From: Anthoceros angustus
Lineage: Eukaryota > Plantae > Anthocerotophyta
Length of the DNA stretch: 64,000 nucleotides
Reading direction: 5' to 3'
Assembly: GCA_010909165.1 (NCBI GenBank)
Contig: VJWM01000044.1
Location: forward strand, 496,001-560,000
Within the stretch, counting starts at the first letter, position 1. Every line of letters starts with the position of its first letter. The translations under genes and the position numbers were made by a program. Below, one piece after another: positions 22,901-54,165 of this stretch. Under the pieces are notes generated by a model. The model did not search any database. It was given only the letters and a program-made list of their open reading frames with translations, and was not told where the DNA came from.

Positions 22901-23861
22901 GTGAGTTATACTGCGATATTCACTCACCTCCTGCAGGCAAGTCATCAACAAACCATGTGAGAAGTGAGTCCAAACACTTGGTTGCCCCTGTGAGAAGGAC
23001 GTAGGCAGGATCCTTCATTTTAATACTCTCAGCGATATCCAGGCACAACTTCAAAACCTCTGCGACATTCCCCTGTGTGAAGGACTTCGGGAAGAACTCC
23101 ACCAGATAACCGAGAAGAACCAATATGTTGCTCTTCACTGTCCACAAACCGACACAAACAAGTGGCACCATCTGATATAAGCTCAGGCATTATAACGAGA
23201 CATGTCATGCACATGCACTGTCAAGCCAATTGAGCCACACAGTGAAAGGAGAAAATGAACCCATGGCATCCTACATGTATTAGAAGTTTTGGCTCTCCTG
23301 AACTCTTTCAAAAGCAGCTGTACAAGCGGATAATCGACAGTAAAGTCGACAGTCTCGGGCTTCAACAACCCCAATTCAAACAAAGCAATCAACAAAGTCA
23401 AGCACGCTGATTGCACGGACTTCGACTCGTCCCTTGCAAAAATGCTGAGACTCTTTTCCTGCAACACCCACGACATCCAATCCACGCCTCAGACCGCGTT
23501 CATCGCACGAGGCGAGCTGGGCAGCCATGGGATCGAACATCACCTTAATTACACGAGCATAAGGCATCGATTTCTCCCCAATCTCCCTGACAAAATCCGC
23601 CAGAAACTCCAACATAGACTCCCGCCCCTTCTGAGCCTCCCTGTCCTTGAGATGCATGAGGCACTCAACCAGGCTGAAGAGCCCATCCTCCTCCTCGAAA
23701 ATCACAGCGCACGCAAGCGCCACGTCCTTGGACGACCCCAGGTCCTTGCTCACGTCCCGCAGGTCCTCCACCAGAGGCTTGAAGTCCACGACAAAGCCCG
23801 TCCTGGACGTCTCAGCCTCGCGCCTCAAGGAGGCGATGCACTTGGCCAATTCCTTGTCCAT
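7970..23861 (-). CDS. PRKDC: DNA-dependent protein kinase catalytic subunit (PIKK family), multi-exon, ~16 kb
   Basis: Kinase motifs KQRPK, VKGGEDLRLDQRIEQLF, GVGDRHLGN, IDFGYSFG, LPVPELIPFRLT. FATC end [26 protein letters not shown] is DNA-PKcs-specific. Other DNA-PKcs-like blocks: HPNAYHRLGAAMA, DRRTKITACELLH, TPLFSATQ/MIRAT. Likely ATG 23861 (MDKELAK). Not all internal exon boundaries were resolved. Confidence 0.95.
19650..19830 (-). other. U12-type (minor spliceosome) AT-AC intron in DNA-PKcs
   Basis: Minus strand: exon ...GGC CTA AG | ATATCCTTTT ... TTCCTTTACatggcaacAC | A TAC AAC CCC CTG GCG ATG. Splicing joins ALRIGL-R-YNPLAMVAMDALE in frame. Confidence 0.88.
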
Positions 23862-24014
23862 CGCTACGCATGCTTCGCACCGCGGACCAGCTCGTCCCAA
23901 GCCTCGCCAGTGCTGAACTAGTCTGTTGTTCGATCTCCCGTTCCGTCCGCGACGACACGCATTTTTTACCCGCGCTCGCTCAAGCAGGAAAGCCTTTGGT
24001 TTTTTAGTTTCAGT

Positions 24015-27000
24015 TCATTGATCAGGCTCGGTGACGAGCTTCAGCTTGAGGCCCATGCTGAGCAGCTCCTGGTACAACAGTTTGCAGGCGTAAGGAATTT
24101 CCAGCTCCACTACGCTCTTGGGAGAGCGGCAGCACAGGCACATGGGCTGTTTTCCGATGCTCTTATGGTCCCTAGTGACCATGAGATGGCAGGTCTTGCA
24201 GTACAAGATTCTGTAGAAATCGGAGAGCACGAAGGTCCTCTCCCAGACCATCCGGGCGCCACCGTGGGCGATGAGGCAGTCACGCTCCATGGTCCCGAAC
24301 CGGACGCCTCCGAACTGGTCCCGTTGCTTCACGGGCTGGCGGGTGAGGGGATTTCGTCGCCCCTCTCCGCGGTATTTGATGGTCTCGGCCACCATGTGGT
24401 TCAGACGTTGGTAGAAGGCGGGGCTGATGGTGATGAGGGCTTCCATCTCGAGCCCCGTCTGGCCGTTATACATGGTCTCCTGGCCCAGCTTCTGGTAGCC
24501 TAGTCTGTGCAGCTCTGCTGCGATGGTCTGGCGGGTGAGGGGAGAGAAGGGCGTGGCATCGCTTCTGCCGAGGCAGTGGCTGGATTGGCGCGCAGGAACA
24601 GCCACCGCCTTGGCGTGCAGGAACTCCATGAGCTGGCCCAGAGTCTGCCTGCTGGGGAAGGCATGGGGGTTGATGATGATGTCCGGGACGATGCCGTCTT
24701 GGGTGAAGGGCATGTCCTCCTGGCGGAACACCTTGCTGATCACGCCCTTCTGCCCGTGTAGGCTGCTGAACTTGTCTCCGACTTCAGGGGCCCGCTGCTT
24801 CCTCATGCGCACTTTGGCGAGGTGGTAGCCGTCCTCTTGGGTGGTCTGGATCACCTGATCGATGCGCATGCCTTGGTGTGAGAGGCGAGCTTTGCTGTCT
24901 TTGCTGCTGATGTCGGTCATGTGGAGTTTGAAATTGCCCGCATCCTCTCCCCCTCTGCCGGCAATCACTTCGCCGAGGGACAGTCTGTGGTTCAGGGGCG
25001 GGAAGCCATCGCTCTCCAGGTGGTCGGAGCCGTCGGGCATCCTGCTGTGCTTGCCATACCCTTCCCCAATGAGCAGGGTGCACTTCTCCGTCCTGTAGTG
25101 CATTGAGCAGAAGAGCCCCCGATCTATGGCCGACTGGTTCATGATCATGGAGTCTTCCTGGTTGTATCCGAGGTAGCAAGCTATGGCCACGATTGCGTTC
25201 TGGCCGTTCGACAATTCATCCTTGCCCAGGCAGGCAGCAGCTCCTGTATTCACCAGCTGGCGTTGCGGGTAGAAGAGCGCATGCGCATTAGTGTCCGACC
25301 TTGCCCGCAAGTTGGTTGTGTAGTTGCCGATGGCCTGCTTGCTATGCTTCTGAGCTTGGTGAGTGTTCCTGGAGCTCTGGTTGTGATTCGCAAATGGAAT
25401 GCTGGAGGCTCCTACACCGAACAGCAGTAAGGGATGGAGCTCGCAGTGCGTGTATGAGCCTCGGTGCGGGTCCTTTTGCGCTGAGGCCAAATCCTCCATG
25501 TCGACAGCAATCAGCGCAGATTCCTCCTCCTCCACTCCCAGGAACTCCACAACGCCCTCCTGTAGGAGGTAGCTGAAGCCATGCTCAGGAGCACTATTCA
25601 GGTGAGCAATATGCTTTGCGTGGATCTTCAGCTTCTGATCTTCCACAATCAGCAACGGTCGCAATGTTCGGCCTGCATCTGCATATATCCTGACCTCCTG
25701 CATCTTGCCATCCTGAACGATCTCCAGCTCATTGAAACCCCTGACCCCCTGTTCGTGGCGTCGCAACTCCCGCACCTCGTGGACCAGGCTGTCAGGCTGG
25801 TGGTGGCAGCCTACCCAGCTCCCGTTCAGAAAAACCTTCCAAGATCTCCTAACTGTCTCGATGCTTGCCATGTTCAACGTTTCCATACCTAAATCCTCAA
25901 GGAAGCCATGGACGATATCCTTCGCAAAATCAGCAGACAAAAAGCTGGACAGAGCAAGCGTCTTCACCAACCCGGAGTTCTCACCCTCAGGATTTTCTAA
26001 AGGACAAACTCTAGACCAATGCGAGTAATTCAGATCACGCGCAGTCGGATCAGCATATCTTCCTTCAGCCCTCATTTTACGAAGCTGGGAGAGCACGCTC
26101 AACGGATTGGTCCGTGACAGATCCCCCACTACTCCAGTCATCTTGGCACTCCTGACACCGATAGCACTCCATTCCCCCGACGAAAATGCTCGTTGGAAGC
26201 CTAACGTGATCAGCTTGGAATCTGTCAGTGTGGTAAGCTTGTTCAAGCTTAAGCCCTTCTTGGAGCTCAAAGCCTTCTGTATCCGCCTCCTCAGTTCAGT
26301 CTTATATCGGCTCATTTGGTTCCGAAACTCCAGACTCATCAGATACCCAGCCAGATCCACACGCTTGTTCCTGAGGTCATCTTTGTCATCGACTTCATCC
26401 CGGCCCAGGTAACAGCAACACAGCCTGTACACCATGTACCCGAGCACAAACGCTTTTGCCTTGTTGCCGAGGCCCTCTTGATCAAAGAGCTTGCTCAAAG
26501 CATTCTGCGCACTGGCAACTTCATCAGGTCCCATCCCATCCTTCACCTTGGAGCCGATGAACTTCAACGAATCCAGCTCCCGTGCAGAGACGTTCACACT
26601 CCTGCTTTTAAGCTTCAAGAAGCGTGACACTTCTCGGTCTGCATGGCGTATGAAACCAAGAACCAGCTCCACCATCTCCGCATCATGTGCGTCATTAGGG
26701 ATGATAGCTTGGAGCACCTCCTTATCAGACGCAACACCAAGTGCTCGCATCCCGATTACCACCGGAACCTGGTCAGGCACATCTCTCAAACGCACAGTGC
26801 ACAATTGAGATCCACATGGATCCGAACCAGCAGCAGCCTTCAGAAACACAGCGTTCCTGTACATGGCATTAGACCCCGGGCACTCCCCGAGCGAGCATGC
26901 AATAAAGCCAGGCTTCTTGCGCATGCGCGCAACAGTGATGCGTTTCCTGAAAGCATGCTCCTGCGGAAACAGCACTTTCTCTGCCCCCTTGATGATAAAA

Positions 27001-27842
27001 TAGCCTCCCTCATCGAAGGCACAGTCCTCTTTGCCTGCCCTGGAGCTCTCCTCCTTCAGGTCCGCAAGATTACACCACGCTGACTTCACCATGACAGGAA
27101 GCTTGCCGAGCAGCACCATACCAAGGTCGCTGGATTCCAACAGGCTTTCTCCTCCGTCCTTGCAAGGCACGTAAATCTCAAGCCTCATGTGCACGAATAC
27201 GTCAGCAGCATATGTCAGGTTGCGCAGACGGGCTTCCCGCGGGTATACACTGTGCCTAACCTCCTCCTCCTCCTCACCATCAGGCTCACAATCCACCACC
27301 GACACCTTCCCCTTGGAGTCGCCAATTTTGCTCGTCCTCTGCTCTTTTCCTCTCCGCCGCTTCTTCCCCTCCACACCCTGCAGCCACTCGTCATCACTCT
27401 GTGAAAAGTCGGCTGCAGCTCCGGCCCCGTCCCCGTCCCCGTCCTGATGCTGATTACGTCCCACCGGCACCGTCGCACGGTCTTGGCTCACAGTCCTCCG
27501 CGGAACGCTGGGCTTGGACACACGGACTTCTCCGAACCTGACTCTGGCTTGCCTGGGGAAGCCGTCAATCCTCTCCGCAGCAGCACTGTGATCCGGCTCA
27601 ATTTCCAGCACCGGCGCTTCGTCGATGAGCGTTTGGAGCCCGTTCGAAATGAAGTCGTTGTAGGATTGAAGCTGGTGATGAAACAGTGGCTTTTCCTGGA
27701 GAAACGCTCGAACCACGGTCCAGCGCCACCTCTCCTCCTGGCTGGAGATGTCCGTGAGCTGCATGCCAACTGGTGGTGGCTTGTAGCCAGCACTTGCGCC
27801 GTCCAGTAGTTCGCAAGGAAATTCATGCGCGCCCATTTCCAT
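24015..27842 (-). CDS. NRPD2/NRPE2-like: RNA polymerase IV/V-type second-largest subunit, paralog A (divergent, intronless, ~1275 aa)
   Basis: RPB2-family motifs YPREARLRNLTY, GGYFIIKGAEK, metal-B GYNQEDS and a C-terminal Zn site. NRPD2-type diagnostics QKHSKQAIG, NPHAFPSRQT and PLTRQPV, versus Pol II NPHAIPSRMT. Confidence 0.88.
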   Translation of the reverse strand: MEMGAHEFPCELLDGASAGYKPPPVGMQLTDISSQEERWRWTVVRAFLQEKPLFHHQLQSYNDFISNGLQTLIDEAPVLEIEPDHSAAAERIDGFPRQARVRFGEVRVSKPSVPRRTVSQDRATVPVGRNQHQDGDGDGAGAAADFSQSDDEWLQGVEGKKRRRGKEQRTSKIGDSKGKVSVVDCEPDGEEEEEVRHSVYPREARLRNLTYAADVFVHMRLEIYVPCKDGGESLLESSDLGMVLLGKLPVMVKSAWCNLADLKEESSRAGKEDCAFDEGGYFIIKGAEKVLFPQEHAFRKRITVARMRKKPGFIACSLGECPGSNAMYRNAVFLKAAAGSDPCGSQLCTVRLRDVPDQVPVVIGMRALGVASDKEVLQAIIPNDAHDAEMVELVLGFIRHADREVSRFLKLKSRSVNVSARELDSLKFIGSKVKDGMGPDEVASAQNALSKLFDQEGLGNKAKAFVLGYMVYRLCCCYLGRDEVDDKDDLRNKRVDLAGYLMSLEFRNQMSRYKTELRRRIQKALSSKKGLSLNKLTTLTDSKLITLGFQRAFSSGEWSAIGVRSAKMTGVVGDLSRTNPLSVLSQLRKMRAEGRYADPTARDLNYSHWSRVCPLENPEGENSGLVKTLALSSFLSADFAKDIVHGFLEDLGMETLNMASIETVRRSWKVFLNGSWVGCHHQPDSLVHEVRELRRHEQGVRGFNELEIVQDGKMQEVRIYADAGRTLRPLLIVEDQKLKIHAKHIAHLNSAPEHGFSYLLQEGVVEFLGVEEEESALIAVDMEDLASAQKDPHRGSYTHCELHPLLLFGVGASSIPFANHNQSSRNTHQAQKHSKQAIGNYTTNLRARSDTNAHALFYPQRQLVNTGAAACLGKDELSNGQNAIVAIACYLGYNQEDSMIMNQSAIDRGLFCSMHYRTEKCTLLIGEGYGKHSRMPDGSDHLESDGFPPLNHRLSLGEVIAGRGGEDAGNFKLHMTDISSKDSKARLSHQGMRIDQVIQTTQEDGYHLAKVRMRKQRAPEVGDKFSSLHGQKGVISKVFRQEDMPFTQDGIVPDIIINPHAFPSRQTLGQLMEFLHAKAVAVPARQSSHCLGRSDATPFSPLTRQTIAAELHRLGYQKLGQETMYNGQTGLEMEALITISPAFYQRLNHMVAETIKYRGEGRRNPLTRQPVKQRDQFGGVRFGTMERDCLIAHGGARMVWERTFVLSDFYRILYCKTCHLMVTRDHKSIGKQPMCLCCRSPKSVVELEIPYACKLLYQELLSMGLKLKLVTEPDQ

Positions 27843-28289
27843 CCTTCGCTCATCAGTCCACAATCCTGGCGTCCACCCTTTACGCACCCCTGCGCTGCGA
27901 ATGGGACGTAAAACACGCCACAATACTTAAAGTCTCGTCTTGGAAATGGATGTAGGAAAGATGCTCTCTATCAGTGTGAGCCCAGCCGGGAAAAATTTGC
28001 GGCCCAGCCTGGCCGGCCAAATTTCTTCCATTGCGTCCCGGCAGGGAAGCCTGTCCGAGAGGGACACAGGACCCAGCCTGAAATTAGTACTAGTCCGAAA
28101 TTATTAGGAAACATTATCATCTTATAAATATCATATATATAAGGCTTTATAAGAGTTACTATAAACCAAGAAAGAAGACTTTATTCTAAAAAAGAGATGG
28201 AAAAACTTATCTATCCATGTCAAGAGGAATAGCCCCTCGATCACGCATTTCAAAACTACCAACCGCCTGAAGAACTTCGTAGTCAGGGA

Positions 28290-29230
28290 TGTGAAAAGGC
28301 CTATTGACCACCAGTATCAAAGAAGCTGCAACTCCCACGCTCGCTGTCGTTCTGTACACTGCATTGGCCAATGCCCTTTGTAGAGCGATAGAAACCCTCT
28401 GCCGGAAGAAAGCAACAATACAAGAAAGGGGGAGGCCAACCCCATTCTTGAGGCTGTGATAAGCCTTGGCGCAGGCCTTGACGAACCTAGAGAAATCCTT
28501 GCCTATGGCTCCGTGAGTCTCGATGGCAAGGGGGACGAAGGCGTGGCCTCTTGCATAGGAGAGTACTTGTGAACCTTAACCGTCGCGCATCCCTCCACCG
28601 CCCAACCCGGAGGGTTAAGGATAACATGTTTGCAGACACTATCCCGAGTGGGATCGATTATAACCACATCAGCAATCGAAACCTGATACCCGGGTCAAAA
28701 ATAGATCAGCCCTAAGTGAAACCTCGTTGAGCAGGTGTACCCTAAATGGAAGGAACCCACCTTTCCTAGCAATAGAGAACATGACATCTCAGCGATACGC
28801 TGCCCGATACGCTGCCCACCCACAGGACAACGAGCCAAGTGCGTCCCGGAGTCATCGAGAGGGCCCCTCAACTGCAAGTTGAAAGAGAGCAAGCCAAAGG
28901 ATGGACCAAGCCCAGACGAAAACGCATCGTGGTGAAAAAAGTTGCTGGTGCGATGCAGAACGCCCGAATACTAGGTCGAGCCACAAGTCAGGAACCTACC
29001 CCCTTCCCCGAGCAAGAGTGGAGACAAACCCGAGTGGGCCTAGGAATGGAGGAATCCTAGAGAAACCAACTGTGCCCGCCCGAACTGTTTTTCCACGAGG
29101 GCTTCAACCGCCTTTGTTTTGGAATCAAATGAAACGACACACATATAACTCAATACGAATCTAAATACGCTGCAATCGCTTGAAGCCCCCGGAGTCCAAC
29201 GGGAAGAGAAGAAAAAGAGGCATGGCAACC
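28290..29230 (-). mobile_element. Degenerate 3' remnant of a CRE/RLE-type non-LTR retrotransposon
   Basis: Minus-strand translation across stops and frameshifts: LHSCSGKGVGS*L..P...FFTTMRFRLGL..P...CS*G.LDDSGTHLARCPVGG (CCHC knuckle), ADVVIIDPT, GHAFVPLAIETHGAIG, SIALQRALANAV. This is the restriction-like endonuclease C-terminal module. Boundaries approximate. Confidence 0.75.
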
Positions 29231-29536
29231 TTCGCTTTGGAGAATAAAAGAGTCATGGCTAATCTTAACGAAGCCTATATGAGAAAAAATCCTCCAGATG
29301 TGAATGATGAATTAAGAAAAGGGATGGGCTAAAAAAGCCGCTAGCGAATGCCGAATTAAGAAACGGGAGCACAAAAATGGGGGCACATGGCATTAGGTAC
29401 TTGAAGTCTCGACTGTTCTCGGATTTGATGTCAAATGTAGCGTCTCGATTTACTTCGCAAGTTGCTAACTCTGACTTAGGACGCAGAGGAGATGTAAGTA
29501 GATTACTTTACTGCATCCTTGAGCAGAAGGGAAGCC

Positions 29537-31533
<1,997 letters not shown>

Positions 31534-33070
31534 CCGGGGTGTTACGACAGAGTATTTAGAAGGGCTGCTGCACATACATTTAGCTCGTTTCCCAAAAACG
31601 AAGCGGATGCATTCTCCGAGGCAGGACAAAATGTACATACACAAGTTCAAATAGTTCCAAGGCTAACACAACCAGATGTCTGGCTCCAGGGCTAACTGCA
31701 TAATCCCTATGAAGCAATTTTGAGGTGTGTTTTGGCCAGTGAAGGATAGGAAAATAGTAAGAATTTGTTCCGTTCTTATACCTAATCTTTTCATTCTCCG
31801 TATCTTATGACAATTACCTTTTGATACGATTTTTTTCTCTAATACATACACTAATTATTTATAGTTGATAAAATTCCAAGCAGAAAATTGAAAGCGAAAA
31901 GCTGGCCAAACACAGAAAGCCAAAGTATAACCCCCTTGAGGACATGAAAAAAGACTTTGTCAAAGCTTATATCCAGTTTCATATACTATTATCTCCGGTA
32001 TTGTACGATGCTGTATGACAGCATATATGTTGAATATTATATCGAGTGGATATTTTTGTATACTGAGATTTATTTGTGAACATTATATCGAATGGATATT
32101 TTTGTATACCAAGGCCTATTTGTGTATCGCTCTACGGCATCAGCCCGTCACGACCGATAGGAAGCCATGGCACTCATGTCACTGTTGTCAAGGCGAGGGT
32201 GAGAAACATATTACTTATCTATATATCGCAAACAATTATTTTGGTCTAGTACACATGTGGAATTAAAAAACTTCTTTGTACATGTCCTAGATAAACTCTG
32301 ACGTTATATCAAAATTTCTCATGTCCAAACTAATATTTACATCAAGGCACCTTCCCACAAATAAATGTATATGAGGTAACATGCAACTTTTTAAAGTTCA
32401 AAATTTTCTTATATAAAGTGATTTAAAATTTACTACCACTTTCATCATAAGTTTTGTATATTGAATTTATTATATATACATTAAATTATTATCCTTATAT
32501 TATACATATATTAGCTAGCAAGTATATGGTATAGCGGAACATGCGAATATTTGTACCTCTTTTCCCACTCTCAATTCTGGGACCTACGGTCGGGGAACGC
32601 GGGGAAGCAGCAACGATACCGTAACACGATGTTGGCGTTTCATAAGCGATTTCACATGGGGCGTGATTTCTGTAAGCTTTCTGTTGCCATGAGGAGTGAT
32701 GAGTTGCTGTCACGCTTCCAGTGCCGGCTCGGGCAGTGGAAGCTATACGGCGGCATATTAACGGCTGTCCGCCGCTTCCCGCGCTCCCCAAGCTTGCTCT
32801 CGAGCATTACAGAGTCGCCTGCTTGCGAGCAGCGTTGGGGAGCTTCAGTCACGCAATTGACTGTGTGCATGCCTGCTGTGGAGCGGAGGGAGTCGCCAAT
32901 TTTGCAAACGAGAGGTGTCGGTGGAGTTCTTCCTTTCTCTTCAATGTGCGTGCTCGGTTTGCGAGCTCAGGTGTTTTCTCCGCTGTGGCAGGCATTGGGC
33001 ATAGCGTCGGAAGTCGTCTGAAAGGAAGCTAATTGGAGCTCCCACATCGACTTGCCTCAAGATTGTCGGC

Positions 33071-36000
33071 ATGGAGGTTGATAGGGAGGATGATTTGGAG
33101 CAGAGCGACCTGTTGAACGAGGACGCGGAGATGAAAGATGCCGGGATAGGAGGCGGCGGTGAAGCTGGCTTGTTGTCAGGTCGGTGGGACTCGCCGCAGC
33201 TGCGAGGGGGACGGTGGTGTAGAATTGAGCTGAGCGAGTTTAGTTTGCGTGATGGCTGAAGCTTGTGGTTGAACAATTGTTGGCTTGTCTTGTCATGCAG
33301 AGGGGGAGGGGGGGGAGAGTGCGGACAAGGGGGCGTGCCCCGGACTTCCGAACATGGAGATGGATACCGGAGGAAGTCGAAGGGGGCTGAAGGATATTTC
33401 TGACGAGGTGCAGAGGATGGTTTGGACGATAGTGAAGGCGTTCTTCAAGGAAAAGACTCTGGTTGCGCACCAGGTTTCGGCGTTCAATGATTTCATGAAC
33501 TTCGGGTTGCAGAGACTGATCGACGAAGCTCCTGTTCATGAGATACCCCCGGATCACAGTCCCGCTGCAGTCCGTCATGACAACCTTCCGAAGCAAGCCC
33601 GGGTTAGGTTCGGGAAGGTGCATGTTGTGAAGCCGAACATTTCGATGAAGCCTCCCAAGCCGGTTGTCAATTTTGGAGTGCAGGATGCGGACAAGAAGGC
33701 TGCAGATGGTGACAAAGAGACGTGGGGAGTGGGAGAGAACGGTGGGGGAGGAAACGGTGAGGGAGGAGGGCAAGGGGCGGGCTGGGGCAATGGAGATGCA
33801 GCAGTTGATAATGGTTGGGGTGAACCCGCCCGTGAGGAAAATGGTTGGGGAGGTGCTGGTGGTGACACAGCCATGCCAGATGGCTGGGCTACCTCCGTGA
33901 AGGGACAGTGCAAGTCACCTGCTGGAGATGAAGCTGCAGCTTTATGGGGTGAAGCAGGAGATAATCAGACGAATGTTGGGGGAAGCGGTCAGAAAGGTGG
34001 ATGGGAGGAGACGAAGTGGGGTGACGACAGTGAGAAAGGATCTAACAAGGGGAAAGGTAATGGAGCATTTGATTTTGAAGGAGACGAGGTAAACTACGGT
34101 CTGAAAGCAGGGAAAGGGAAAGGGAAAGGGGTAGGGAAAGCTCATGAAGACGAAGGAGTAGACTATGGCAAAACTTGGTGTGGCGATGAGGGAATAGAGT
34201 ACGGCAGCATGGCTTCCAAAGGGGGCAAACTGCCTGCTGAGGACGATGAAGTTGCTTTTGGCATCAAGGCCTCTAAGGGCAAACTGCAAGCTGGAAAAGA
34301 AGGGGTGTGGAAACAGGCATGGAAGGGTGACAGTGATGGAAACAACGAAGAGGATCCCAAAGATCGAGGCAAGGGGGTCGGGAAAGCTAAAGGGAATGGC
34401 AAACTTGATGCAGAACAGCAGACAGTGAAACCTAAGGGAAGAACTAAAGGAACTGCTGCAGACAGAAAGAAAAAGGGGAAAGCTGTTGAAGGTGATCAGG
34501 CGGATGGAGGAGTACAGGATGCAACAGAGAAGAGAGGGAGTGGTGGAAAGAAGCGGAAGTCTCGAAAGGAGACCCACGCTGAGGCAGAGGAAGAAGATGT
34601 TCGCACTGTTCTTTACCCTAGGGAGGCTCGGCTGCGGAACTTAACATATGCTGCTGATGTCTATGTTGACATGACGGTTGAAATTTATGTGTCTCCTTCG
34701 GCTGGAACGACCTCCAAAGCTGGCAAGTCCGGGTCTGCAGATAAGTCATCCAGCTCCAAAGGCTTCTCTGAAGGCCGACCTGCAGAAGGGGAAGAGAGAA
34801 TTCTGGAAGTAAGGTCCCTCCCTCGTGAGCATCTGGGGAAGATACCTGTTATGGTGAAATCAGAATTTTGCAATCTTCACGGTCTGGATAGCAAGCGGGT
34901 AGCAAAGGAGGACGATGCTTATGACATTGGTGGGTACTTCATTATTAAAGGTGCAGAAAAGGTGTTTTTTGCACAGGAGCAGCCTTTTATACACCGCCTT
35001 ACGCTCTCTAGGAACAAAGACGGATTAACTGCGTCTTCTGGTGGAGGGTGCAAGGGAACTAACTTGGTGTTCAGAAACACTGTCTATCTGAGGAGAAAAG
35101 TACCTCAAAAAGGATCTGTGGAGGCAAGTGGACCTCTTGTATGCCAAGTTCGTTTGAGAAGGGTCGGAGATACCATCCCTTTGGTGATTGTGTTGCGAGC
35201 ACTTGGGGTCGTTGCAGACAGAGATGTGCTTAAGATTGTATGTGTTGATCTTGAGGATAGCAGCATGGTGGAGGTGGCACTCCCATTTATTCAAGATGCA
35301 GACAAGGAAATGACTGATTTCCTTGAAACTGAAGGGAAGAATCCTAGTAAGGCACGTGAGAAAAAAAATGCCTTGAAGTACATCTTCTCAAAGATGAAAA
35401 CCAAGCCAAAAGACTATCTTCAGGGTGTTACAGAAGTTCTGGGCTTACTTTTTCAGGAGCAGGTTATCAACTCGGAGGTCGTGCAAGAACAGAGATCTGC
35501 GCCGGAAACAGAGGCCCTAAATGACCATGCAAAGGCACTCCTGTTGGGGTACATGGCGCACAAACTTTGTTGCTGCTACTTGGGACGTTTGGACGTGGAT
35601 GACAGAGATAACTTCAGGAACAAACGTCTGGATTCAGCAGGTCACCTGCTAAGTCTGGAGTTCCGGAACCTTATGGTGAGGTTCAAGAACGAGATGAAGA
35701 GGAGGATTCAAAAGTCTTTTGCCAAAGCGAGCGTCAACTTCAGGCTAGATACCTCCATTTTCACCTTAGGTTTCCAGAGGGCCTTCTCTACAGGAAACTG
35801 GAGTGCTCGGGGTGACATGAACAGCAAGTGCACAGGAGTGATATCAGATCTGCCACGTGCAAATCCCATGAGTGCATATTGCCAGTTGAGAAAGACAAGG
35901 ACGCAGGTCAATTACATTGCAAAGGCAACAAATGCCAGGTACTTGAACTACTCACATTGGGGCCGAGTGTGTAGCTTGGAGACTCCTGATGGTGAGAACT

Positions 36001-37961
36001 GCGGCCTGGTGAAGAGTCTTGCACTGACGAGCTTTGTCAGTGTTGAATCGTCCGAAAAAATTGTTCATGACTTTCTCGCGGAAGTGGGAATGACAAAGGC
36101 CAACTCGGTCGGAACTGATTATGAGTTAATGCTGAAGTCAGATAAGGTTTTCCTTAATGGCAAGTGGGTTGGCTGTCATGCTGACCCGGACGGTCTTGTC
36201 AGGGGTATGCGCAACCTGCGCCGGCAGCAGTTCCTGAACAGTGAGGTGGAAATTGTTCAGGACAAAAAGATGAGGGAGGTTCGTATATATACAGATGCAG
36301 GCAGACCACTACGACCGTTGCTGATCGTAGAGGACCAAAGGCTTAGGTTGAATGTCAAGGACATAGAGCACCTGGAATCTGGCCCAGCCCATGGGCTCAC
36401 CTATCTCTTGGAGCGAGGGGTGCTGGAGTTCCTTGGGGTGGAGGAGGAAGAAGAGGCGCATATTGCAGCTGATACTGCTCAGTTGGAGGGTGCCCAGGGA
36501 AGTCCTGATGCCCTCGCTTTCACACATTGTGAGATCCATGCCCATCTAACGTATGGCCTAGGTGCCTCTGGAATCCCCTTCGCAAACTACAATCAATCTT
36601 CTCGAGATATGCAGCAGGCGCAGAAACATGGCAAGCAAGCCATTGGGAATTATGCCACTAATTTGCGAGCAAGATCAGACACTACTGCCCATGAGCTGTT
36701 CTATCCTCAAACTCAGTTAGTGAAAACGGGAGCCATCAGCTGCCTGCAGATGCCTGAGCTGGCGAATGGTCAAACCGCGATTGTGGCAATTGCGTGCTAC
36801 AGTGGATACAACCAGGAGGACTCCCTTATTATGAACCAGTCTTCCATAGATCGGGGACTATTTCGTTCCTTTCACTACAAGACCCACCGGAGCATATTGC
36901 GGAGAGGTACAGGTGAACAGTTTGGCAAGCCCGACCCCGAGAGCGCTACAGCTACCAAGAGCCCGCAGGCGTATGAAAAGCTGGATACGGATGGTTTTCC
37001 GTATGTAGGTGCAAGCTTGGCAGTCGGTGACATTGTGGTTGGAAAGTTGAGAGTAGACAGGAACGGCGTTGGGATGCCCACAGATGCGAGTGAGAAGGCC
37101 AAAGTCTCCAACAGAGGTCGGGTGGATCAGGTGATCCTGACTACTGAAGAGGATGGAACCTACATTGCCAAGGTGCGGGTGAGGCTACCTCGGGCCCCTC
37201 AGATCGGGGACAAGTTCAGCAGTATGCACGGGCAGAAGGGTGTGATCGGCATGATTTTGCCCCAAGAGGACATGCCTTTCACCAGAGAAGGCATCGTCCC
37301 TGACATCATCGTCAACCCGCACGCCTTCCCTACCAGGCAGACTCTTGGGCAGTTGATGGAGAATTTGCTGGGTAAAGTCGTGTCTTGTCCTGTTAAGGAG
37401 GGCAAGCGGAAGCTTATGAGGAGCGACGCCACTCCCTTTACAAGTCTGACGACAGATGCCATCACGGAGGAGCTCCACCAGTCAGGATACGGACGCTGGG
37501 CCAAGGAATGCATGTATAACGGATTGACTGGAGAGAAAATGGCGGCCCTGATCAACATTGGGCCAACATTCTACCAGAGGCTGACGCACATGGTGAGTGA
37601 CAAGGTGAAGTATCGAGGCAGAGGATTCGTGCACCCGCTCACTCGTCAGCCCGTGAAGGAGCGCGACAGGCACGGTGGGGTCAAGTTTGGAGAAATGGAG
37701 CGAGACTGTATGATCGCCCACGGCGCAGCCATGACTCTGCGAGAGAGAACCTTCGTCCTCTCCGATTTCTACAGGATCTACTACTGCAAGGGCTGCGAGG
37801 TTCTGGCAAGCATGGACAACTGCACCAAAATCCCCAGCTGCCGCATCTGCCGCCAAGTAAAGCACGTAGTTCAGCTGGAAATCCCCTACGCCTGCAAGCT
37901 TCTTCATCAGGAACTCCTGAGCATGGGCATCTGTGTAAGACTCATAACAGAGCCCTGTTAA
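33071..37961 (+). CDS. NRPD2/NRPE2-like: RNA polymerase IV/V-type second-largest subunit, paralog B (~1589 aa; exons 33071-33179 and 33301-37961)
   Basis: GYNQEDS, GDKFSSMHGQKG, NPHAFPTRQT, HPLTRQPV, GGVKFGEMERDC and RKTRTQVNY..K...ARY are NRPD2/E2-type. The upstream exon MEVDREDDLE... splices CAG|GTCGGT...GCAG|AG in phase 1 into the long ORF. Confidence 0.92.
33640..34610 (+). other. ~325-aa low-complexity insertion in paralog B with WG/GW motifs
   Basis: G/D/E/K/N-rich sequence between the conserved VKP and LYPREARLRN. It has 8 Trp flanked by Gly (TWG, GWG x3, GWA, LWG, GWE, KWG), four DE(G)[VI]x[YF]G repeats and a KKRKSRK basic cluster. Confidence 0.9.
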
Positions 37962-38051: not shown

Positions 38052-38468
38052 TTAGGAACTTGGGTCCCCCTCTGCTCCTCCTCCGCCTCCGCCCTTCCCT
38101 TCCAGCCGCTTCCCGGCGAGGGCACTGCTGTCCGCCTCCAGGTTGTCCACGGACTTGGCGACTGCCTGCAGGTGGCTTTTGAAAGCGTGCACCCTCTTCG
38201 TCAGAGCCTCTACCTCTTCGCTGCACCTGTCCACAGTTCCCCTCACCAAGGCCACCCTTCCCAGAAGATTCTCCATCCTCTGGCCCACGAAGGTCTCAAG
38301 CTGCGTCACTCTGGCCTCCAGGTCCTGCAGGGGAGAGACCGCCCTGGCAGCAGAAGACAGTGCTTGCCCAGCGGGTGGAGTTCTCGGAGGAGACCCGCCC
38401 GGCACCGCAGAATCCATCCCACCAACAAGAAGAATGGGGAACAGAAGAAGCGCCAAAGCCCAGGGCAT
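38052..38468 (-). CDS. Small hypothetical protein with signal-peptide-like N-terminus and coiled coil
   Basis: 138-aa ATG-started ORF with hydrophobic WALALLLFPILLVGG and a heptad-like LQDLEARVTQLE...VEALTKRV...LQAVAKSVDNLE segment. Family not recognised. Confidence 0.55.
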   Translation of the reverse strand: MPWALALLLFPILLVGGMDSAVPGGSPPRTPPAGQALSSAARAVSPLQDLEARVTQLETFVGQRMENLLGRVALVRGTVDRCSEEVEALTKRVHAFKSHLQAVAKSVDNLEADSSALAGKRLEGKGGGGGGAEGDPSS

Positions 38469-40807: not shown

Positions 40808-41009
40808 GCTAGCTGATGGATTGATTACCTATTAAAGTGAAGTTCGGGCTTCACAAAGCGCTCTGGGGCATTCGCGGGGATAATGTACATCACGCCCTCT
40901 CCGATCCTGGAAAGACTTCTCTTGCAATACTTAACGGAATGGACCGTATGAGTGCAAATGGGAGAGCAAAAGTTCTTCCTTTCGGTTGCCACCTTTACTA
41001 GGGCATCTA

Positions 41010-41562
41010 CAACACGTCACCCTCGGCGTCTCGGAGAAATACAGCATTTTGCAACAAGCACCCTTTCAGCGGTCGTACATGCTAGAAAAGAACCAAACGG
41101 GGTCTTCTGGACTCTGTGCTGCCCTTCTAGGTCTGTTTCCCTTGTTCACCTCCATCATCCACAACAGAAGGATTCGATGACCTCAAGAACGGCACGTCCT
41201 AAAAAGCTCACCAGCCGGACTCCTCGTAGAGCTCTACGAGGATCCTCATCACGTCACGTGGAAGGTGCAGCTACTTTCCTATCCCCATGTAGAGGCAGAC
41301 TTGAACCCAATAGCTTTCCTTCCACCCTAGTCGCTACCACGCCTCCATCTAAGTTTTCTTCAAACTCGCTGTCAAAATTGCTTTCCTCTATGTGCCTGAT
41401 TAGAGGAATTCTACCTCTAGGGCTCGCCAAGGCCTGCAACTGTACACCTTTTTCCACCTTCTTGATTGTCCGAGTCGGGACAATACCAGTCCTATCGGCT
41501 TCCGACCCTTTTGGAGTTGCTGCAGCATTCAGGACTTCACGGATAAGAGACACCCATTGCTC
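41010..41562 (-). pseudogene. Degraded 3' fragment of LAS1 (duplicated segment)
   Basis: SLIREVLNAAATPKGSEADRTG...RHIEESNFDSEFEENLDGG...VAAPST aligns with the LAS1 C-terminus at ~54200-54750, with indels and a stop. Confidence 0.88.
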
Positions 41563-41658
41563 CGTAGTTACGAATAGGTGTTCAGTACTTTATATCGAGA
41601 CGTTCACTTTTTATACGTAAAATATAAATTTAAATTTCTACATGAGAAGCACATAGAG

Positions 41659-42237
41659 AGTAACACCCCCTTTTCGGGGAGGTGGGGCAATCACGCAATT
41701 AGCGACAAAAACGTCACCAGACACTAGTACTAGGCCTCCAAGTAGCTCGCAGTCCTTCCACGGGATGACTCGTAGTCAGCACGTCTGCCGCTGCTGTTTA
41801 TTCCAACAAGAGTCAACAAGAATACATGAGAGATTAAAGAGCTCCCCATCTTTGCCTAAGCTAGGAGCTTAACTCTCTCCCCTCGATCTCCTCCTCAAAG
41901 ACGCCACACTCTAAGCTCCCAAGGCACAGAGGCACTCACCCCTATTCTCACAAGAGTGTAGTTCCCAAGTGCTAGGATCCTTCTAGACATGCTCACACTC
42001 CAGGCTCCCAAAGCCTCTAGGCACCATAGTCCTATCCTCACCCAATGCTAGGATCACAAGCTGTTTTTTCCTCTAGGGCTAGCCTCAATTCCTTTTATAG
42101 GGAGGCTTACATCATTCCCAAAGTAACTGCCTAAAACAGACTTTCTTCCTTAAGCCCTAAGCTAAGTCTTACCAGCACAATTACAACTTACTAAACTAGA
42201 TCCAGGGCTGCATGCCTCTCATGCAAGGCTTCTTACT
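41659..42237 (-). repeat. 3' LTR
   Basis: Direct repeat of 47354-47949; plus-strand ends AGTAACACCCC...TCTTACT. Confidence 0.93.
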
Positions 42238-45200
42238 TTCTCCCCCATTGGGAGAAGAATCATTGTCCTCAATGATAGCCAACGTATCGAGTGATCATCC
42301 AGGATCCTTTCTGAATATCCTCTAACGTTGCCGAAACTGGATCTGAGATCCCACGCAACTTTACCATATAATGTGGTATGATTCCATGTTTGGTAGGCAT
42401 GCTATTCTCTACAAGGAATTCCTCAATTTCCCGCAGTCCTTGATTATGCTGCATGAGAATACTGAACTTCTTCTTATTGATGTCCTCTTTCTCTTTGCGT
42501 GACACAAATGGTTTCAGTAGTAATACATGGAACACATCATGTACAAAAATCCAATCAGGTAGTTGTAACTTGTAAGTCACTTCTCCAATGCGCTTCAAAA
42601 CTACAAATGGACCACCATATCTTGGTCTTAACTTAAGAGTTAGTTCTTGAGGTAATGGAAAATGCTTCAATTTCACCCATACTTTATCCCCAACGTTGAA
42701 TAAAGTTTCTCTCCTGTGCCTATCAGCATATTTCTTCTTACGTGCTTGAGCCTTGGCTAAAATTCCTTTGGCAATCTCATGTCTAGCCTTCAAATGCTCA
42801 ATGAATCGGCGTGGATCTCTAGTGGCAGTGTCAAAAACTTCAGCATTTAGCATGGATACCACGTCCAGTGCTGAATTTCCTCCAATCTCAAAAGGACTAT
42901 ATCCCAAAGAGCTGTGTGCAGTGTTGTTATAACAAAATTCTGCATCATTTGGATGATCAGTCCAATCCCTCTTATCAATTTGCACATAATGTTTTAAGTA
43001 TTCTTCTTGGATTCGGTTGACTCGCTTAGTTGAGCCATCAGTATCTGGATGGTAAGCTGTGCTCATACATAATTCCACATTCAAGGTTCTCATCAAATGC
43101 TGCCAAAATTCTCTTGTGAACCTTGGATCCTTGTCACTAACAATCTGCATAGGCAAGCCATGGTACTTGTACACACACTTCTTAAACAAACTGCCTACCT
43201 CAGAAGCTGTCACTCGCTTCTTTGTAGGGATGAAATATGCTTCTTTGGTGAATCTATCCACCACTGTCAGAATAGCTGTACAACCATTACTGGGTGGCAA
43301 AGGCATGATGAAATCCATAAAGATACTTCATGGTCCACTAGGAATAGGTAGAGGTTGTAGCAAACCTCTTGGTTTAGCTTGCTCCACCTTATCCTGTTGA
43401 CAAACAGCACATGCCTTAACATAATCCACTGTATCCTGATACATTCCTGGCCAGTAAAACAGCTTCCTTAGCTTCTCATAAGTGGGATCAATTCCACGGT
43501 GACTTGCACTTGGCACATCATGACATTCAACAAGCAATTTGCTCTTCCCAAGAGATAATGTCTCATATCTTCAGACAATGAATGACAACAGTCATTTCCT
43601 TCTCGTAGGTGGGATACTTCAATTCATAATGATACAATTTCCTTGACTCAAAAGCTATCAGCTTATGATCTTGCATCAACACTCCACCTATGGCCACGTC
43701 TGAGGCATCGCTGTACACTTTCACATCCTTCTTGGGATTATACATTTCTAATACTAGAGTAGTACTCAATTTCATCTTCAAGTATTCAAATGCTGCTTGA
43801 CATTGAGCATCCCATTTCCAAGCTTTCGTCAAGAGGTCAGTTATGGGGCCTTAACTTAAGAGTTAATCCTTGAGGTAATGGAAAATGCTTCAATTTCACC
43901 CATACTTTATCCCCAACGTTGAATAAAGTTTCTCTCCTGATATTTCTTACGTGCTTGAGCCTTGGCTAAAATTCCTTTGGCAATCTCATGCCTAGCCTTC
44001 AAATGCTCAATGAATCGTGGATCTCTAGTGGCAGTGTCAAAAACTTCAGCATTTAGCATGGATACCACGTCCGTCTTGAATTCCTCCATCTCAAAAGGAC
44101 TACATCCAAAGAGTCAGCGTGTTGTTATAACAAAATTACGCATCATTTGGATGATCACCAATCCCTCGATCAATTTGCACATAATGCCTTAAGTATTCTT
44201 CTTGGATTCGGTTGACTCGCTAGTTGAGCCATCAGTATCCGGATGGTAAGCTGTGCTCATACATAATTCCACATTCAAGCATTTCATCAAATGCTGCCAA
44301 AATTCTCTTGTGAACCTTGGATCCTTGTCACTCACAATCTGCATAGGTAAGCCATGGTACTTGTATATATACTTCTTAAACAAGCCTACCTCGTGTCGCC
44401 ACCGCTTCTTTGTAGGGATGAAATGTGCTTGTTTGGTGAATCTATCCACCACGCCAATAGTCAGTAACCATTCGGGTGGCAAAGGCATGATGAAATCCAT
44501 AGAGATACTCTTCCAAGGTCCACTTGGAATAGGTAGAGGTTGTAGCAAACCTCTTGGTTTAGCTTGCTCCACCTTATCGCTGACAAACGACATGCCTTAA
44601 CATAATCCAGTATCCTCGATACATTCTCGCCAAGAAGCAGCTTCCTTAGCTTCTCATAAGTGGGATCAATTCCACGGTGACTTGCACTTGGCACATCATG
44701 ACATTCAACAAGCAATTTGCTCTTCCCAAGAGATAATGTCTCATATCTTCAGACAATGAATGACAACAGTCATTTCCTTCTCGTAGGTGGGATACTTCAA
44801 TTCATAATGATACAATTTCCTTGACTCAAAAGCTATCACATGATCTTGCATCAACACTCCACCCATGGCCACGCCCCGAGGCATCGCAGACACTTTCACA
44901 TCCTTCTTGGGATTATACATTTCTAATACTAGAGTAGTACTCAATTTCATCTTCAAGTATTCAAATGTCGCTTGACATTGAGCATCCCATTTCCAAGCTT
45001 TCGCCAAGAGGTCGCTTATGGGGCCTGTTAACTTAGCAAACATATGTACAAATCTCTTGTACATAGAAGTCAAACCCATGAACCATGAACCTCATGAATG
45101 TTTATAGGAGGTTACCAATCTTGAATGGCTCTCACCTTATCGGGATCCATTCTAATGCCATCAACGAGACAATGAATGACAATCATTTCCTTCTCGTAGG

Positions 45201-47353
45201 TGGGATACTTCAATTCATAATGATACAATTTCCTTGACTCAAAAGCTATCAGCTTATGATCTTGCATCAACACTCCACCTATGGCCACGCCCCGAGGCAT
45301 CAGACACTTTCACATCCTTCTTGGGATTATACATTTCTAATACTAGAGTAGTACTCAATTTCATCTTCAAGTATTCAAATGCTGCTTGACATTGAGCATC
45401 CCATTTCCAAGCTTTCGTCAAGAGGTCAGTTATGGGGCCTGTTAACTTAGCAAACATATGTACAAATCTCTTGTACATAGAAGTCAAACCCATGAAACTG
45501 CGAACCTCATGAATGTTTATAGGAGGTTACCAATCTTGAATGGCTCTCACCTTATCAGGATCCATTCTAATGCCATCAACAGAGACAATAAACCCTAAGA
45601 AAGCTACCTGTGTCTTGACAAAGTCACACTTCTTAATTGCCAAGAAGAAAGAATTCTCTCTTAGCTTTTGTAACACTTCACTTAAGTGTTCAGTATGTTC
45701 CTCCAAGGTATGGCTAAAGATTAATATGTCATCTAGATAGATTCCAACACACTTATCCACCAGCGATTCTGATCTGATAGTACCCCGTCATCAGATCTAG
45801 CTTGGTGAAATACTATGCACCTTCAACCTGTCAAATATATCATCCATTCTTGGCAAAGGATACGCATTCTTAACTGTAATTTGATTCAGAGCACTGTAAT
45901 CTAAACACATTCTTAGTCCTCCATTCTTTTTGCGTGTAAACAATACCAACGCACCAAAAGGAGACTTACAGACTCTGATATATCCCTTTGCTAGCAAGTT
46001 GGATAGTTATCGCTTGAGTTCCTCCAGCTCATCCTGCGACAATCTATATGGTGCTCTCGACGGAGGCGTACTCCCTGGCCTCAATTCAATCTCATAATCT
46101 ACTACTCTGCGAGACGGTAAAGGTGGTAGTTCATCAGGCATCAAATCCTTAAAATCATACAAGACAGTTTGTATTCCCTTCGGGATGTCTTCCTTTTTTG
46201 AGGATTCTTCCTCAAGACCATCCTCTAATCCCTGGAGCATAACTAGATAAAGGTTCTTCTTCTATCTTATGTCTTGCTTGAGCTCTCTTTTTGAAATCAA
46301 CTGTACTAAGCACTTCTCAAGCTTCTGACTAAGATTAGCAAAAAACCACCTTGTGCTTTCCATTCTTCAATCTAAGCCATTCATGTGAGTGAATTTAGCA
46401 CAGTCTTACAATGCCCTCATATGCAGGAGGTGGATAAGCTCCACATATTTTATAGTGGACTTAAGAGGTGGGCTCTGGATAGAATTCAAATGACAAAACC
46501 TCAAACGCTGCGAGAGGCTGTTGCAGCTGCAGATGCGATACCAGACACAAGTCGTGCCGAGGAAGCACCAGTGTCTTTTAGAGGAAGGTATCCAAGATCT
46601 TTTCAGGGAAGATCAAGAGGTAGAAGAAGAGCCACCAACACTGTGAATAGTAGAACAAATTATGGGTGGCGGAAAAGGTCCAACAATAACTCTACTTCTA
46701 ACCCATTCATCTTCCCACATATATACATAAGGGCTCCACCTTCCCTTAAAATAGTATCATCCCTGACATTAGATGACTCACCACATGCTGTCACAACAAC
46801 ATGTGGCCATTGGCGTCATTTAGGCTCGCAAAAAACTCCTGAATCCTAAGTCCTGGAGCTTGAGGATTGGCAGCTATTAGATTCAGTTAAGAATTCCTAG
46901 CATGCGGACAATCTTTCACAAAATGTCCCTGCTCTCCACAACTAAAGCACGCACCAAATTGAGGGCCTGTCGTCCTTTGGCTTCCATGGCTACGACCTCT
47001 ATTGGCTCCTCTGCCTCTACCAACATTTTCATTTATTCCACTATTCCTAGTGTTGGTGGCTCTTTCTCTACCTCTTGATCTTCCCTGAAAAGATCTTGGA
47101 TACCTTCCTCTAAAAGACACTAGTGCTTCCTCGGCACGACTTGTGTCAAGTATCGCATCTGCAGCTGCAACAGCCTCTCACAGCATTTGAGGTTTTGTCA
47201 TTTGAATTCTATTCATTTGAGGTTTTGTCATTTTAATAGCTGTATCTCTTTCTTCCGCTGTATTCTCTCTACTCTGCCTGGCTCTTCAGGATCGGCCATC
47301 TCTAGCTAGCGCCCTAGCTAAAAGATGCTTCAACCTTGAGCTCTGATACCACA

Positions 47354-48972: not shown

Positions 48973-49374
48973 AGCAACAGCTCCGAAACTGGAGAGGTAT
49001 CTACTCGTTTGCAAAAAGTACCAACTTATTTTATGGTACTTATCGGTACTGAAATGTATTAGGAGAAGTATGGATCTAAGAACGGTAGAAATAGTGTAGG
49101 GCAAGTCTTTGGCATCAGAATAAAGTGTATTCAGTGGTAGAAACCTAAAACCTAGCTTGGCTTGCGTGTCCCGTCTACGTAAATTCTTTTCATGTTCTCT
49201 TACGCCGGAACGAAAGGAAGTAGTTGGAGGTGTCGGCGCAGGTCTTCTGACCGGCAGCCTCGCGCACCTCCTTTTCACGCTCCGAGAGGTGCGCGCAGGG
49301 AGGAAAGGCTCCCTGCCGCCGCCTGCACTAGGCGGCGCCATTCCCCAGCTTGGCGGAGGTCGGAAATATGAAAA

Positions 49375-50185: not shown

Positions 50186-50826
50186 CGTAGCCTGAATTTC
50201 AGCACCAATTTCCTTCCCTGTGCAATATTCAACTGCGATCAGCGGATCTGTAAACTAAGTCACGTTTTGTGACTTGATCAAAGCTTGTCACATATTTCCT
50301 CTTCCTTGCAATAGGTGACAGTCACAGAAAAATAGGACGCCTCCACCTTCCTTTCCTGAGCTTCCCAGGTTCTGCAATGACAAGTTAGAATCAAAAGACA
50401 GAATAACAAGTGAAACCTTCATGGACCAAAAGATCAAATAACAGGTGAAACCTGAAGGTGGACGAGAGGCCGCGTCCAATGCAGGATATGACAGTCAGAG
50501 TGGTGCCACTGCCAAACTCGGTTTCCAAGGGCCACAGTAACATACAGGCACCAGAAGTGATACAACGCTGCCTTCCGAATTCGAATAGAAGATGCCGGTG
50601 AATTGCATCTATACTCCACTAGGGGTAAAATTTGTATATCCAGTATCAGCTGAAGCAAGACAAAGGGGATGGATGATGAGCAGCCTACAGGTAGAAGGGA
50701 TTGGACATCACAAGTCGATGCAAAAAGGAGGGAGGCAAATACAGCTGTTGGATGGAAGCAGCAGCAGCAGCCAGTGAAGCTAGATCTCACCTAAAAACAG
50801 CCAAGAGTTGGAGAGGTGGCCATCAA

Positions 50827-54005: not shown

Positions 54006-54165
54006 AGTCTCCAATGACGTGATGTTCACAACGACCCTTGGCGGATTCGCGGGGATGATGCACAAAATGTCCTCTCCAGGCGCCACATAGGGTTCAAGTG
54101 CAGTACGGAACGGGATGAACCGTATAACGCGCCAATGGAAGTGAAGGAGTCCTGTTAAGTTACGT

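What the first reader, a model, noticed from the sequence alone, without database searches (positions are those of the whole stretch)
33640..34610. Putative Argonaute-hook (WG/GW) platform inserted in a polymerase SECOND subunit
Seen: a ~325-aa disordered-looking insertion where RPB2-family proteins have only a short loop (between VxKP and LxPxEARLRN). It carries 8 WG/GW motifs in G/D/N/E context within ~100 aa (ETWGVG, GAGWGNG, DNGWGE, ENGWGGAG, DGWA, ALWGE, KGGWEETKWGDD). Established: such repeats are the AGO4-binding platform on the Pol V largest-subunit CTD (NRPE1) and on SPT5L/KTF1. I know of no such platform on NRPD2/E2. Inference: this lineage may recruit Argonaute through the second subunit, a different RdDM polymerase architecture, with paralog A as the hook-less counterpart.
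Basis: partly seen in the sequence, partly recalled or inferred. Interest (0 to 1): 0.9.

Follow-up and report, generated by a model that had tools for sequence, protein, structure and literature searches.

The report
Argonaute-hook loop in hornwort polymerase subunit
A gene-silencing RNA polymerase subunit in a probable hornwort carries a long, floppy, expressed loop studded with glycine-tryptophan motifs of the kind that dock Argonaute proteins, in a subunit where no such dock has been reported, although binding itself is untested.

Summary
Observation confirmed. Gene B (33071-37961, +) is an intact Pol IV/V second subunit (NRPD/E2) of a probable hornwort. A hairpin loop that is 13 aa in Pol II and most NRPD/E2 is 327 aa here. 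The loop is exonic: RNA contigs spliced at the 5' intron run into it, relatives' indels in it are in frame (12, 18, +24 nt), and AlphaFold leaves it disordered. Its first 128 aa hold 8 WG/GW and score 82.8 on a re-implemented published AGO-hook score (Arabidopsis SDE3 74.5; best other RPB2 homolog 25). A relative only 66% identical in the core keeps a homologous insert with 3 hooks and a W-x-x-T-x-W-G motif. Paralog A has an 89-aa hook-less loop. Qualifiers: liverwort NRPD/E2 proteins also carry 157-282-aa inserts at this site, with tryptophans but almost no GW, so the site is an expansion hot spot. AGO binding, polymerase assignment and the state of this genome's NRPE1 hooks were untestable. 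Best reading (0.6): an extra Argonaute dock on the upstream-DNA face of Pol V, doing part of the job of angiosperm-only SPT5L. No paper reporting it was found; the scan had noted only the gene pair.

The parts
32915..32991 (+). 5'-UTR intron of gene B (GT..AG, 77 nt), inferred
   Evidence: X1, X19 and X21 contigs stop matching at 32990 and continue with letters from 32883-32912
33071..33179 (+). first coding exon of gene B (ATG 33071)
   Evidence: in frame with exon 2; joined to it in spliced contigs
33180..33300 (+). phase-1 intron, 121 nt, GT..AG
   Evidence: skipped in X19 and X21, no depth in X1 in bin 33202-33285, frame-breaking indels of 1, 1 and 4 nt in X3
33301..37961 (+). second coding exon of gene B: NRPD/E2-type second subunit, 1589 aa in all
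   Evidence: Pfam Rpb2_1 to Rpb2_7; best PDB matches 8hil_B and 7eu0_B, Pol IV/V subunit 2; tree
33636..34616 (+). 327-aa disordered insert at the tip of the two-strand hairpin between VxKP and PxEARLRN (residues 149-475)
   Evidence: alignment; pLDDT 28-42 over the insert, strands on both sides
33684..34067 (+). WG/GW platform, residues 165-292, 8 hooks, net charge -12
   Evidence: dos score 82.8; composition; coordinates
34068..34616 (+). second half of the insert: four degenerate DE-x-V/I-x-Y/F-G repeats, GKGKG runs, three non-GW Trp, basic KKRKSRK (possible nuclear localisation signal, 34548-34568) and an acidic end
   Evidence: sequence; DEVxY/FG and GGKKRKSR are shared with L001; function inferred only
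36804..36824 (+). metal B site GYNQEDS, intact
24015..27842 (-). paralog A: intronless NRPD/E2-type gene, 1275 aa, 55% identical to B, long branch, catalytic motifs intact
27243..27509 (-). 89-aa loop of paralog A at the same site, one Trp, no WG/GW

Best explanation
Gene B encodes an active Pol IV/V second subunit whose protrusion-side hairpin has grown into a 327-aa disordered arm. The first 128 aa of the arm are an Argonaute-hook platform: Gly-flanked tryptophans spaced mostly 10-20 residues apart dock in the Trp pockets of siRNA-loaded AGO4-clade proteins. That tethers them next to the upstream DNA behind the transcribing enzyme, most likely Pol V, in addition to whatever hooks NRPE1 and SPT6L supply, and in a lineage without SPT5L/KTF1. 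Shown: identity of the subunit, exonic status, frame constraint, disorder, composition, partial Trp conservation. Inferred: position in the holoenzyme (from my knowledge of Pol II numbering and cited structures), AGO binding, use in Pol V, role in methylation.
For: dos score 82.8 with 8 hooks against at most 25.1 in 129 long RPB2-family homologs and 23.2 elsewhere in six frames of the window; published values are NRPE1 170.3, SDE3 74.5, NERD 59.9 (PMC2910046). Trp 6.2% against 6.3% in the reference set, no F/H/Y/I, rank correlation 0.85. The insert of relative L001/P0001 (core identity 66%) is homologous (z 4.5, 0 of 300 shuffles), has 5 Trp and 3 hooks in its first half, and keeps W-x-x-T-x-W-G, which aligns even with Trp masked in 3 of 5 gap settings. 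11 of 16 Trp touch Gly in the two hornwort-clade inserts, against 1 of 20 in seven liverwort inserts. Spliced RNA contigs contain the hooks and indels are in frame. The host protein belongs to the complex that recruits AGO4; the protrusion flanks upstream DNA in Pol V and the known hooks point upstream (PMC10229537). SPT5L is angiosperm-restricted. Hooks are gained repeatedly by members of otherwise hook-less families.
Against: No binding data. The dos score also passes unrelated glycine-rich proteins, and the companion ics score could not be computed. Ser is only 4% against 15% in the reference. The relative has only 3 hooks, score 17.5, GW adjacency p 0.09. Liverworts fill the same site with Trp-bearing, GW-poor sequence, so Trp there need not serve AGO. 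Trp codons could not be read in the close relatives because the substitution table was cut at 33720. A. agrestis has almost no CHH methylation in vegetative tissue.
Confidence: 0.6

Rival explanations
1. The arm is functional but is not an AGO dock. It is a general aromatic-sticker disordered region (condensate formation, nuclear import, or binding of another Trp-reading partner), equivalent to the GW-poor inserts of liverworts; the GW pairs follow from high Gly content.
For: Liverwort inserts at the same site keep conserved non-GW Trp motifs, such as a Trp followed by L/F and A/V near the start, WADQ, and W followed within a few residues by DL and are well conserved among themselves. The hornwort insert also has non-GW Trp, Y/F-G repeats and a basic cluster. 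With 22% Gly, 4.3 of 11 Trp would touch Gly by chance. GW182-type Trp motifs can bind non-AGO partners.
Against: All 8 Trp of the N-terminal cluster touch Gly (p 0.005) while the 3 later Trp do not; composition matches AGO platforms; hornwort and liverwort inserts are not clearly homologous (z at most 2.6).
Confidence: 0.22
2. The insert is tolerated, near-neutral expansion of a surface loop that lost its constraint when NRPD/E2 diverged from NRPB2; short Gly/Trp units multiplied by slippage.
For: The loop is 13 aa in all NRPB2 but variable in NRPD/E2: 15-21 aa in mosses and angiosperms, 40-41 in Tasmannia and Diphasiastrum, 89 in A, 157-327 in liverworts and B. Short tandem repeats sit in it and relatives differ by in-frame indels. 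Paralog A does without it.
Against: Trp is costly and rare in disordered loops (p 2e-4); Trp motifs survive in a relative whose core is only 66% identical; in organism B the stretch 33721-34224 differs by about 5%, like the downstream coding part, against about 9% plus indels in the intron.
Confidence: 0.15
3. The segment is an unrecognised intron, an assembly artefact or part of a pseudogene.
For: No single RNA contig spans the whole insert, and X1 has holes at 33727-33798 and 34095-34157. Contigs drop minor isoforms.
Against: Open frame for 981 nt; a spliced X21 contig runs from exon 1 to 33860 and an X19 contig from 33804 to 34983; no joint skips the insert; present in DNA of organism B with in-frame indels; homologous insert in L001.
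Confidence: 0.03

Closest known systems
[quoted passage not shown]
   Same: Orthologous clade, all Rpb2 domains, SMHGQKG signature, intact metal B site.
   Different: 13-21-aa hairpin replaced by a 327-aa arm with 8 WG/GW; nearly intronless; second, hook-less paralog 5 kb away.
NRPE1 C-terminal AGO-binding platform (El-Shami 2007 as cited in PMC4476159, PMC10533338)
   Same: Disordered, G/N/D/K-rich, repeated WG/GW/GWG, poorly conserved around the Trp, on a core subunit of the RdDM polymerase.
   Different: On the second subunit; an internal loop anchored at both ends, not a tail; 8 hooks against 19 in Arabidopsis NRPE1; no DeCL domain.
SPT5L/KTF1 and SPT6L hooks (PMC10229537, PMC10991848)
   Same: Extra hooks in the Pol V elongation complex on the upstream side; SPT5 bridges to the Rpb2 protrusion.
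   Different: Those are separate elongation factors with C-terminal tails; SPT5L is angiosperm-only; here the hook is built into the enzyme.
Grass NRPE1/NRPF1 and NRPD/E2 versus NRPF2 paralogs; maize NRP(D/E)2a,b,c (10.1101/272708, PMC10533338)
   Same: Retained polymerase paralogs, one on a long branch, differing in hook content.
   Different: In grasses the hook difference is on the largest subunit; no second-subunit paralog is reported to carry hooks.
Liverwort NRPD/E2 inserts (Marchantia paleacea KAG6555414.1, M. polymorpha MPTK1_5g21260, Calypogeia, Riccia)
   Same: Long disordered insert at the same site, Trp in the first half, GKGK runs, basic cluster near the end.
   Different: Only 1 of 20 Trp touches Gly; no clear sequence homology to the hornwort insert; not described in papers found.

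Membership tests
NRPD/E2 second subunit | Full Rpb2 domain set | tested here: met
   seven Pfam domains
NRPD/E2 second subunit | Groups with land-plant NRPD/E2, apart from NRPB2 | tested here: met
   SH-aLRT 100 for the NRPD/E2 side, quick trees; best PDB hits are Pol IV/V subunit 2
NRPD/E2 second subunit | Metal B site and GDKFSSMHGQKG intact | tested here: met
NRPD/E2 second subunit | Assembles with NRPD1 or NRPE1 | not testable with these tools
   needs affinity purification
WG/GW Argonaute-hook platform | Repeated WG/GW/GWG above chance | tested here: met
   8 in 99 aa; p 0.005 for adjacency, p 2e-4 for Trp density
WG/GW Argonaute-hook platform | Compositional bias (dos score of PMC2910046) | tested here: met
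   82.8 by my re-implementation, threshold 6.99; note that ordinary single motifs also pass that threshold in my run
WG/GW Argonaute-hook platform | ics score below 2.14 | not tested
   reference table not retrieved; rank correlation of composition 0.85 used instead
WG/GW Argonaute-hook platform | Intrinsically disordered and exposed | tested here: met
   pLDDT below 50 over nearly the whole insert, no secondary structure; few aligned rows there, so low pLDDT is partly expected
WG/GW Argonaute-hook platform | Present in the mature mRNA, in frame | tested here: met
WG/GW Argonaute-hook platform | Trp conserved in orthologs while flanks vary | tested here: inconclusive
   one distant relative keeps 2-4 aligned Trp and 3 hooks; close relatives' codons not readable
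WG/GW Argonaute-hook platform | Trp-dependent binding to AGO | not testable with these tools
   needs pull-down
Pol V-specific second subunit (B) versus Pol IV-specific (A) | Paralogs partition between NRPE1 and NRPD1 complexes | not testable with these tools
   only the hook asymmetry and A's long branch point that way

The most novel reading that the evidence does not exclude
Hornworts split their second subunit into a Pol V form (B) that carries the main Argonaute platform and a hook-less Pol IV form (A), with the NRPE1 tail hooks reduced or lost, so that AGO recruitment moved from the largest to the second subunit.
Probability: 0.12. Interest if true: 0.85.

Novelty: new variant of a known kind. 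Interest (0 to 1): 0.66.

Why it matters
In textbook RdDM the second subunit is shared and hook-less, and AGO4 is recruited by NRPE1 and SPT5L. A hook built into the second subunit would show that the Argonaute dock can arise at a new site of the polymerase core, offers a way for lineages without SPT5L to raise AGO valency, and gives a sequence marker that may separate Pol IV from Pol V in bryophytes, where the two are hard to tell apart by phylogeny. It is directly testable in transformable Anthoceros agrestis, if organisms C or D are that species or it has the same insert. The liverwort inserts at the same site give a natural GW-poor control.

Tried and rejected
Intron or artefact reading: rejected. 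HMMER search of 1.84 billion representatives with the insert and flanks gave only flank matches and no further insert homolog; the Atlas and Pfam gave nothing for the insert. No ortholog of paralog A was found. Gymnosperm N-terminal extensions were checked and are not hook platforms. Common origin of hornwort and liverwort inserts: not resolved (pairwise z at most 2.6; AU p 0.35 for a hornwort plus liverwort clade). Order of the A/B/L001 split: unresolved (AU p 0.40 and 0.08). The careful tree did not finish, so quick trees are quoted. Ten paper searches found no report of a second-subunit hook, nor of Mp5g21260; subscription papers are not covered. A paper placing this exact hairpin in the Pol II structure was not found. 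This genome's NRPE1, AGO4 and SPT6L could not be fetched: there is no eukaryote genome search, and the scan's notes do not mention them.

Full report
Gene and organism. The window holds two RPB2-family genes: B (ORF 33285-37961, +) and A (24015-27842, -), each with all seven Rpb2 Pfam domains and 55% identical to each other. The best solved-structure matches of B are Pol IV/V subunit 2 chains (8hil_B E 1e-238, 7eu0_B), ahead of Pol II. In quick maximum-likelihood trees B, A and one Logan protein (P0001, locus L001, run SRR33208241) form a clade with SH-aLRT 100 inside NRPD/E2, separate from liverwort, moss, lycophyte, fern and seed-plant sequences. By elimination this is a hornwort; earlier notes of the scan say the same, but I did not confirm the species. 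Metal B (GYNQEDS), GDKFSSMHGQKG and the C-terminal zinc motif are intact in B, and in A with SLHGQKG.

Gene model. B starts at ATG 33071, has a 121-nt phase-1 intron (33180-33300) and then one exon to 37961, 1589 aa. Contigs of runs X19 and X21 (two related organisms) skip exactly this GT..AG intron; X1 (same organism label as the best DNA holder) has no depth in it and, like X19 and X21, shows a further 5'-UTR splice (32915-32991), so these runs are spliced RNA. All database searches used the single-exon ORF by reference; the joined two-exon model was used only in local scripts for numbering, alignment and trees.

The insert. Between VxKP and PxEARLRN every NRPB2 has 13 aa, as do gymnosperm, fern and Amborella NRPD/E2; other angiosperms and mosses have about 13-21, Tasmannia 40, Diphasiastrum 41. 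B has 327 (33636-34616), L001 250, A 89. AlphaFold models the flanks as two strands and the insert as unstructured, pLDDT about 30-40; the folded part matches Pol II second subunits over their N-terminal 410-423 residues. From my knowledge of Pol II numbering this hairpin is yeast Rpb2 about 101-113, in the protrusion region; the protrusion lies where upstream DNA leaves the enzyme and is contacted by SPT5 (PMC7111264), and restrains upstream DNA in Pol V (PMC10229537). The exact placement is inference, not measured here.

It is exonic and coding. The frame is open over the whole insert while the other five frames have 2-30 stops. An X21 contig spliced at the 5' intron continues to 33860, through the first four hooks; an X19 contig runs from 33804 through the right border to 34983; X1 contigs cover 33365-33726, 33799-34094 and 34158 onward with no differences; no joint skips the insert. 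Relatives' indels inside it are 12, 18 and a net +24 nt, against 1, 1 and 4 nt in the intron. In organism B DNA the intron has 11 substitutions in 121 nt, the stretch 33721-34224 about 26 in 504, and 34196-35450 63 in 1255. No single RNA contig spans everything, and contigs cannot exclude minor isoforms. The substitution list was cut at 33720, so Trp codons of the close relatives could not be read.

The hooks. Eight of eleven Trp touch a Gly, all within residues 178-276, spaced 20, 11, 10, 13, 20, 19 and 5. Adjacency has shuffle p 0.005 in that segment; Trp density has p 2e-4 against liverwort inserts. Re-implementing the dos score of PMC2910046 delimits one domain, residues 165-292, score 82.8; the next best is 23.2 in six frames of the window and 25.1 among 129 long homologs. 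Published values: NRPE1 170.3, SDE3 74.5, NERD 59.9, but also 64-130 for unrelated glycine-rich proteins, so the score is necessary, not sufficient. Composition tracks the reference set (Trp 6.2 against 6.3%, rank correlation 0.85) except for low Ser. The rest of the insert has degenerate DE-x-V/I-x-Y/F-G repeats, GKGKG runs and a KKRKSRK cluster.

Conservation. L001 is 66% identical to B in the core, has a candidate phase-1 intron in the same 5' position and a homologous insert (z 4.5) with 5 Trp in its first half, 3 of them hooks. W-x-x-T-x-W-G aligns with B even with Trp masked in 3 of 5 gap settings; DEVxY/FG and GGKKRKSR are also shared. Its own score is modest (17.5; adjacency p 0.09). 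Whether L001 is the ortholog of B is not resolved by the core tree, though its insert resembles B and not A.

All seven liverwort NRPD/E2 proteins retrieved have 157-282 aa at the same site, as does M. polymorpha MPTK1_5g21260. They contain Trp, but only 1 of 20 touches Gly, against 11 of 16 in B and L001 (Fisher p 7e-5, which ignores relatedness and Gly content). Homology between the two insert types is not established. The site is thus an expansion hot spot of NRPD/E2, and the GW character is particular to the hornwort B type.

Mechanism. Most likely (0.6) the arm tethers siRNA-loaded AGO4-clade proteins to the upstream face of the elongating polymerase, where the NRPE1 and KTF1 hooks also point. 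SPT5L/KTF1 is reported only in angiosperms, AGO4/6/9 and both NRPD1 and NRPE1 types are reported for hornworts or earlier lineages, and hooks in the Pol V complex are multiple and redundant, so an added hook is more probable than a relocated one. Rivals: a functional non-AGO disordered arm like that of liverworts (0.22), near-neutral loop growth (0.15), artefact (0.03). Paralog A lacks hooks, sits on a branch twice as long and has no ortholog in the databases; its expression was not tested, and a Pol IV role is a guess by analogy with maize and grass paralogs. CHH methylation is nearly absent in A. agrestis vegetative tissue (PMC10952607), so any role may be limited to reproductive or sporophyte stages.

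Novelty. Ten literature searches found hooks on NRPE1, SPT5L, SPT6L, NERD and SDE3, and none on a second subunit; the review PMC10533338 names only NRPE1 and SPT5L in the Pol V complex. The library lacks many subscription papers. I file this as a new variant of a known kind: known subunit, known motif, new combination, binding untested. Interest 0.66.

Noticed in passing
P0010, P0012, P0018-P0020, P0022, P0023, P0298 (liverwort NRPD/E2): Liverwort second subunits carry a 157-282-aa Trp-bearing, GW-poor insert at the same hairpin, conserved between Marchantia and Riccia; each Riccia species shows 2-3 paralogs. Not found in the papers searched.
   Followed up: partly
P0007, P0008, P0011, P0013-P0016 (gymnosperm NRPD/E2): Long N-terminal extensions (about 130-210 aa before the first conserved motif), without a WG/GW platform.
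   Followed up: partly
P0006 (Diphasiastrum), P0029 (Tasmannia): Smaller expansions of the same loop (41 aa with KDKAAGTS-like repeats; 40 aa acidic), showing repeated independent growth.
   Followed up: partly
window 24015-27842 (-): Paralog A is intronless, on a long branch, and has AETIKY where B has SDKVKY after the HMV motif; a non-LTR-retroelement-like remnant seems to lie upstream at about 28200-29000 (recognised by eye).
   Followed up: partly
window 29519-31533 (+): A 26S proteasome ATPase (RPT2-like) gene lies between paralogs A and B, so they are not directly head to head (recognised from the ORF, not searched).
   Followed up: no
window 38052-38468 (-): A 138-aa coiled-coil ORF ends 91 nt after B's stop on the opposite strand; the X1 contig that starts at 34158 is 4416 nt long and, if colinear, would reach across it, suggesting overlapping 3' ends.
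   Followed up: no
window 49000-62600: A duplicated block: two pyruvate dehydrogenase E1-beta-like ORFs (50827-51735 -, with internal deletions; 59176-60357 +), two metacaspase-like genes, and a second, broken copy of the 54166-55755 ORF near 40950-41620 (recognised from ORFs).
   Followed up: no
window 7970-23900 (-) and 2274-3602 (-): A long DNA-PKcs-like kinase gene and an RPN6-like proteasome gene (recognised from ORFs); Ty3-like retroelement remnants at 42200-46900.
   Followed up: no
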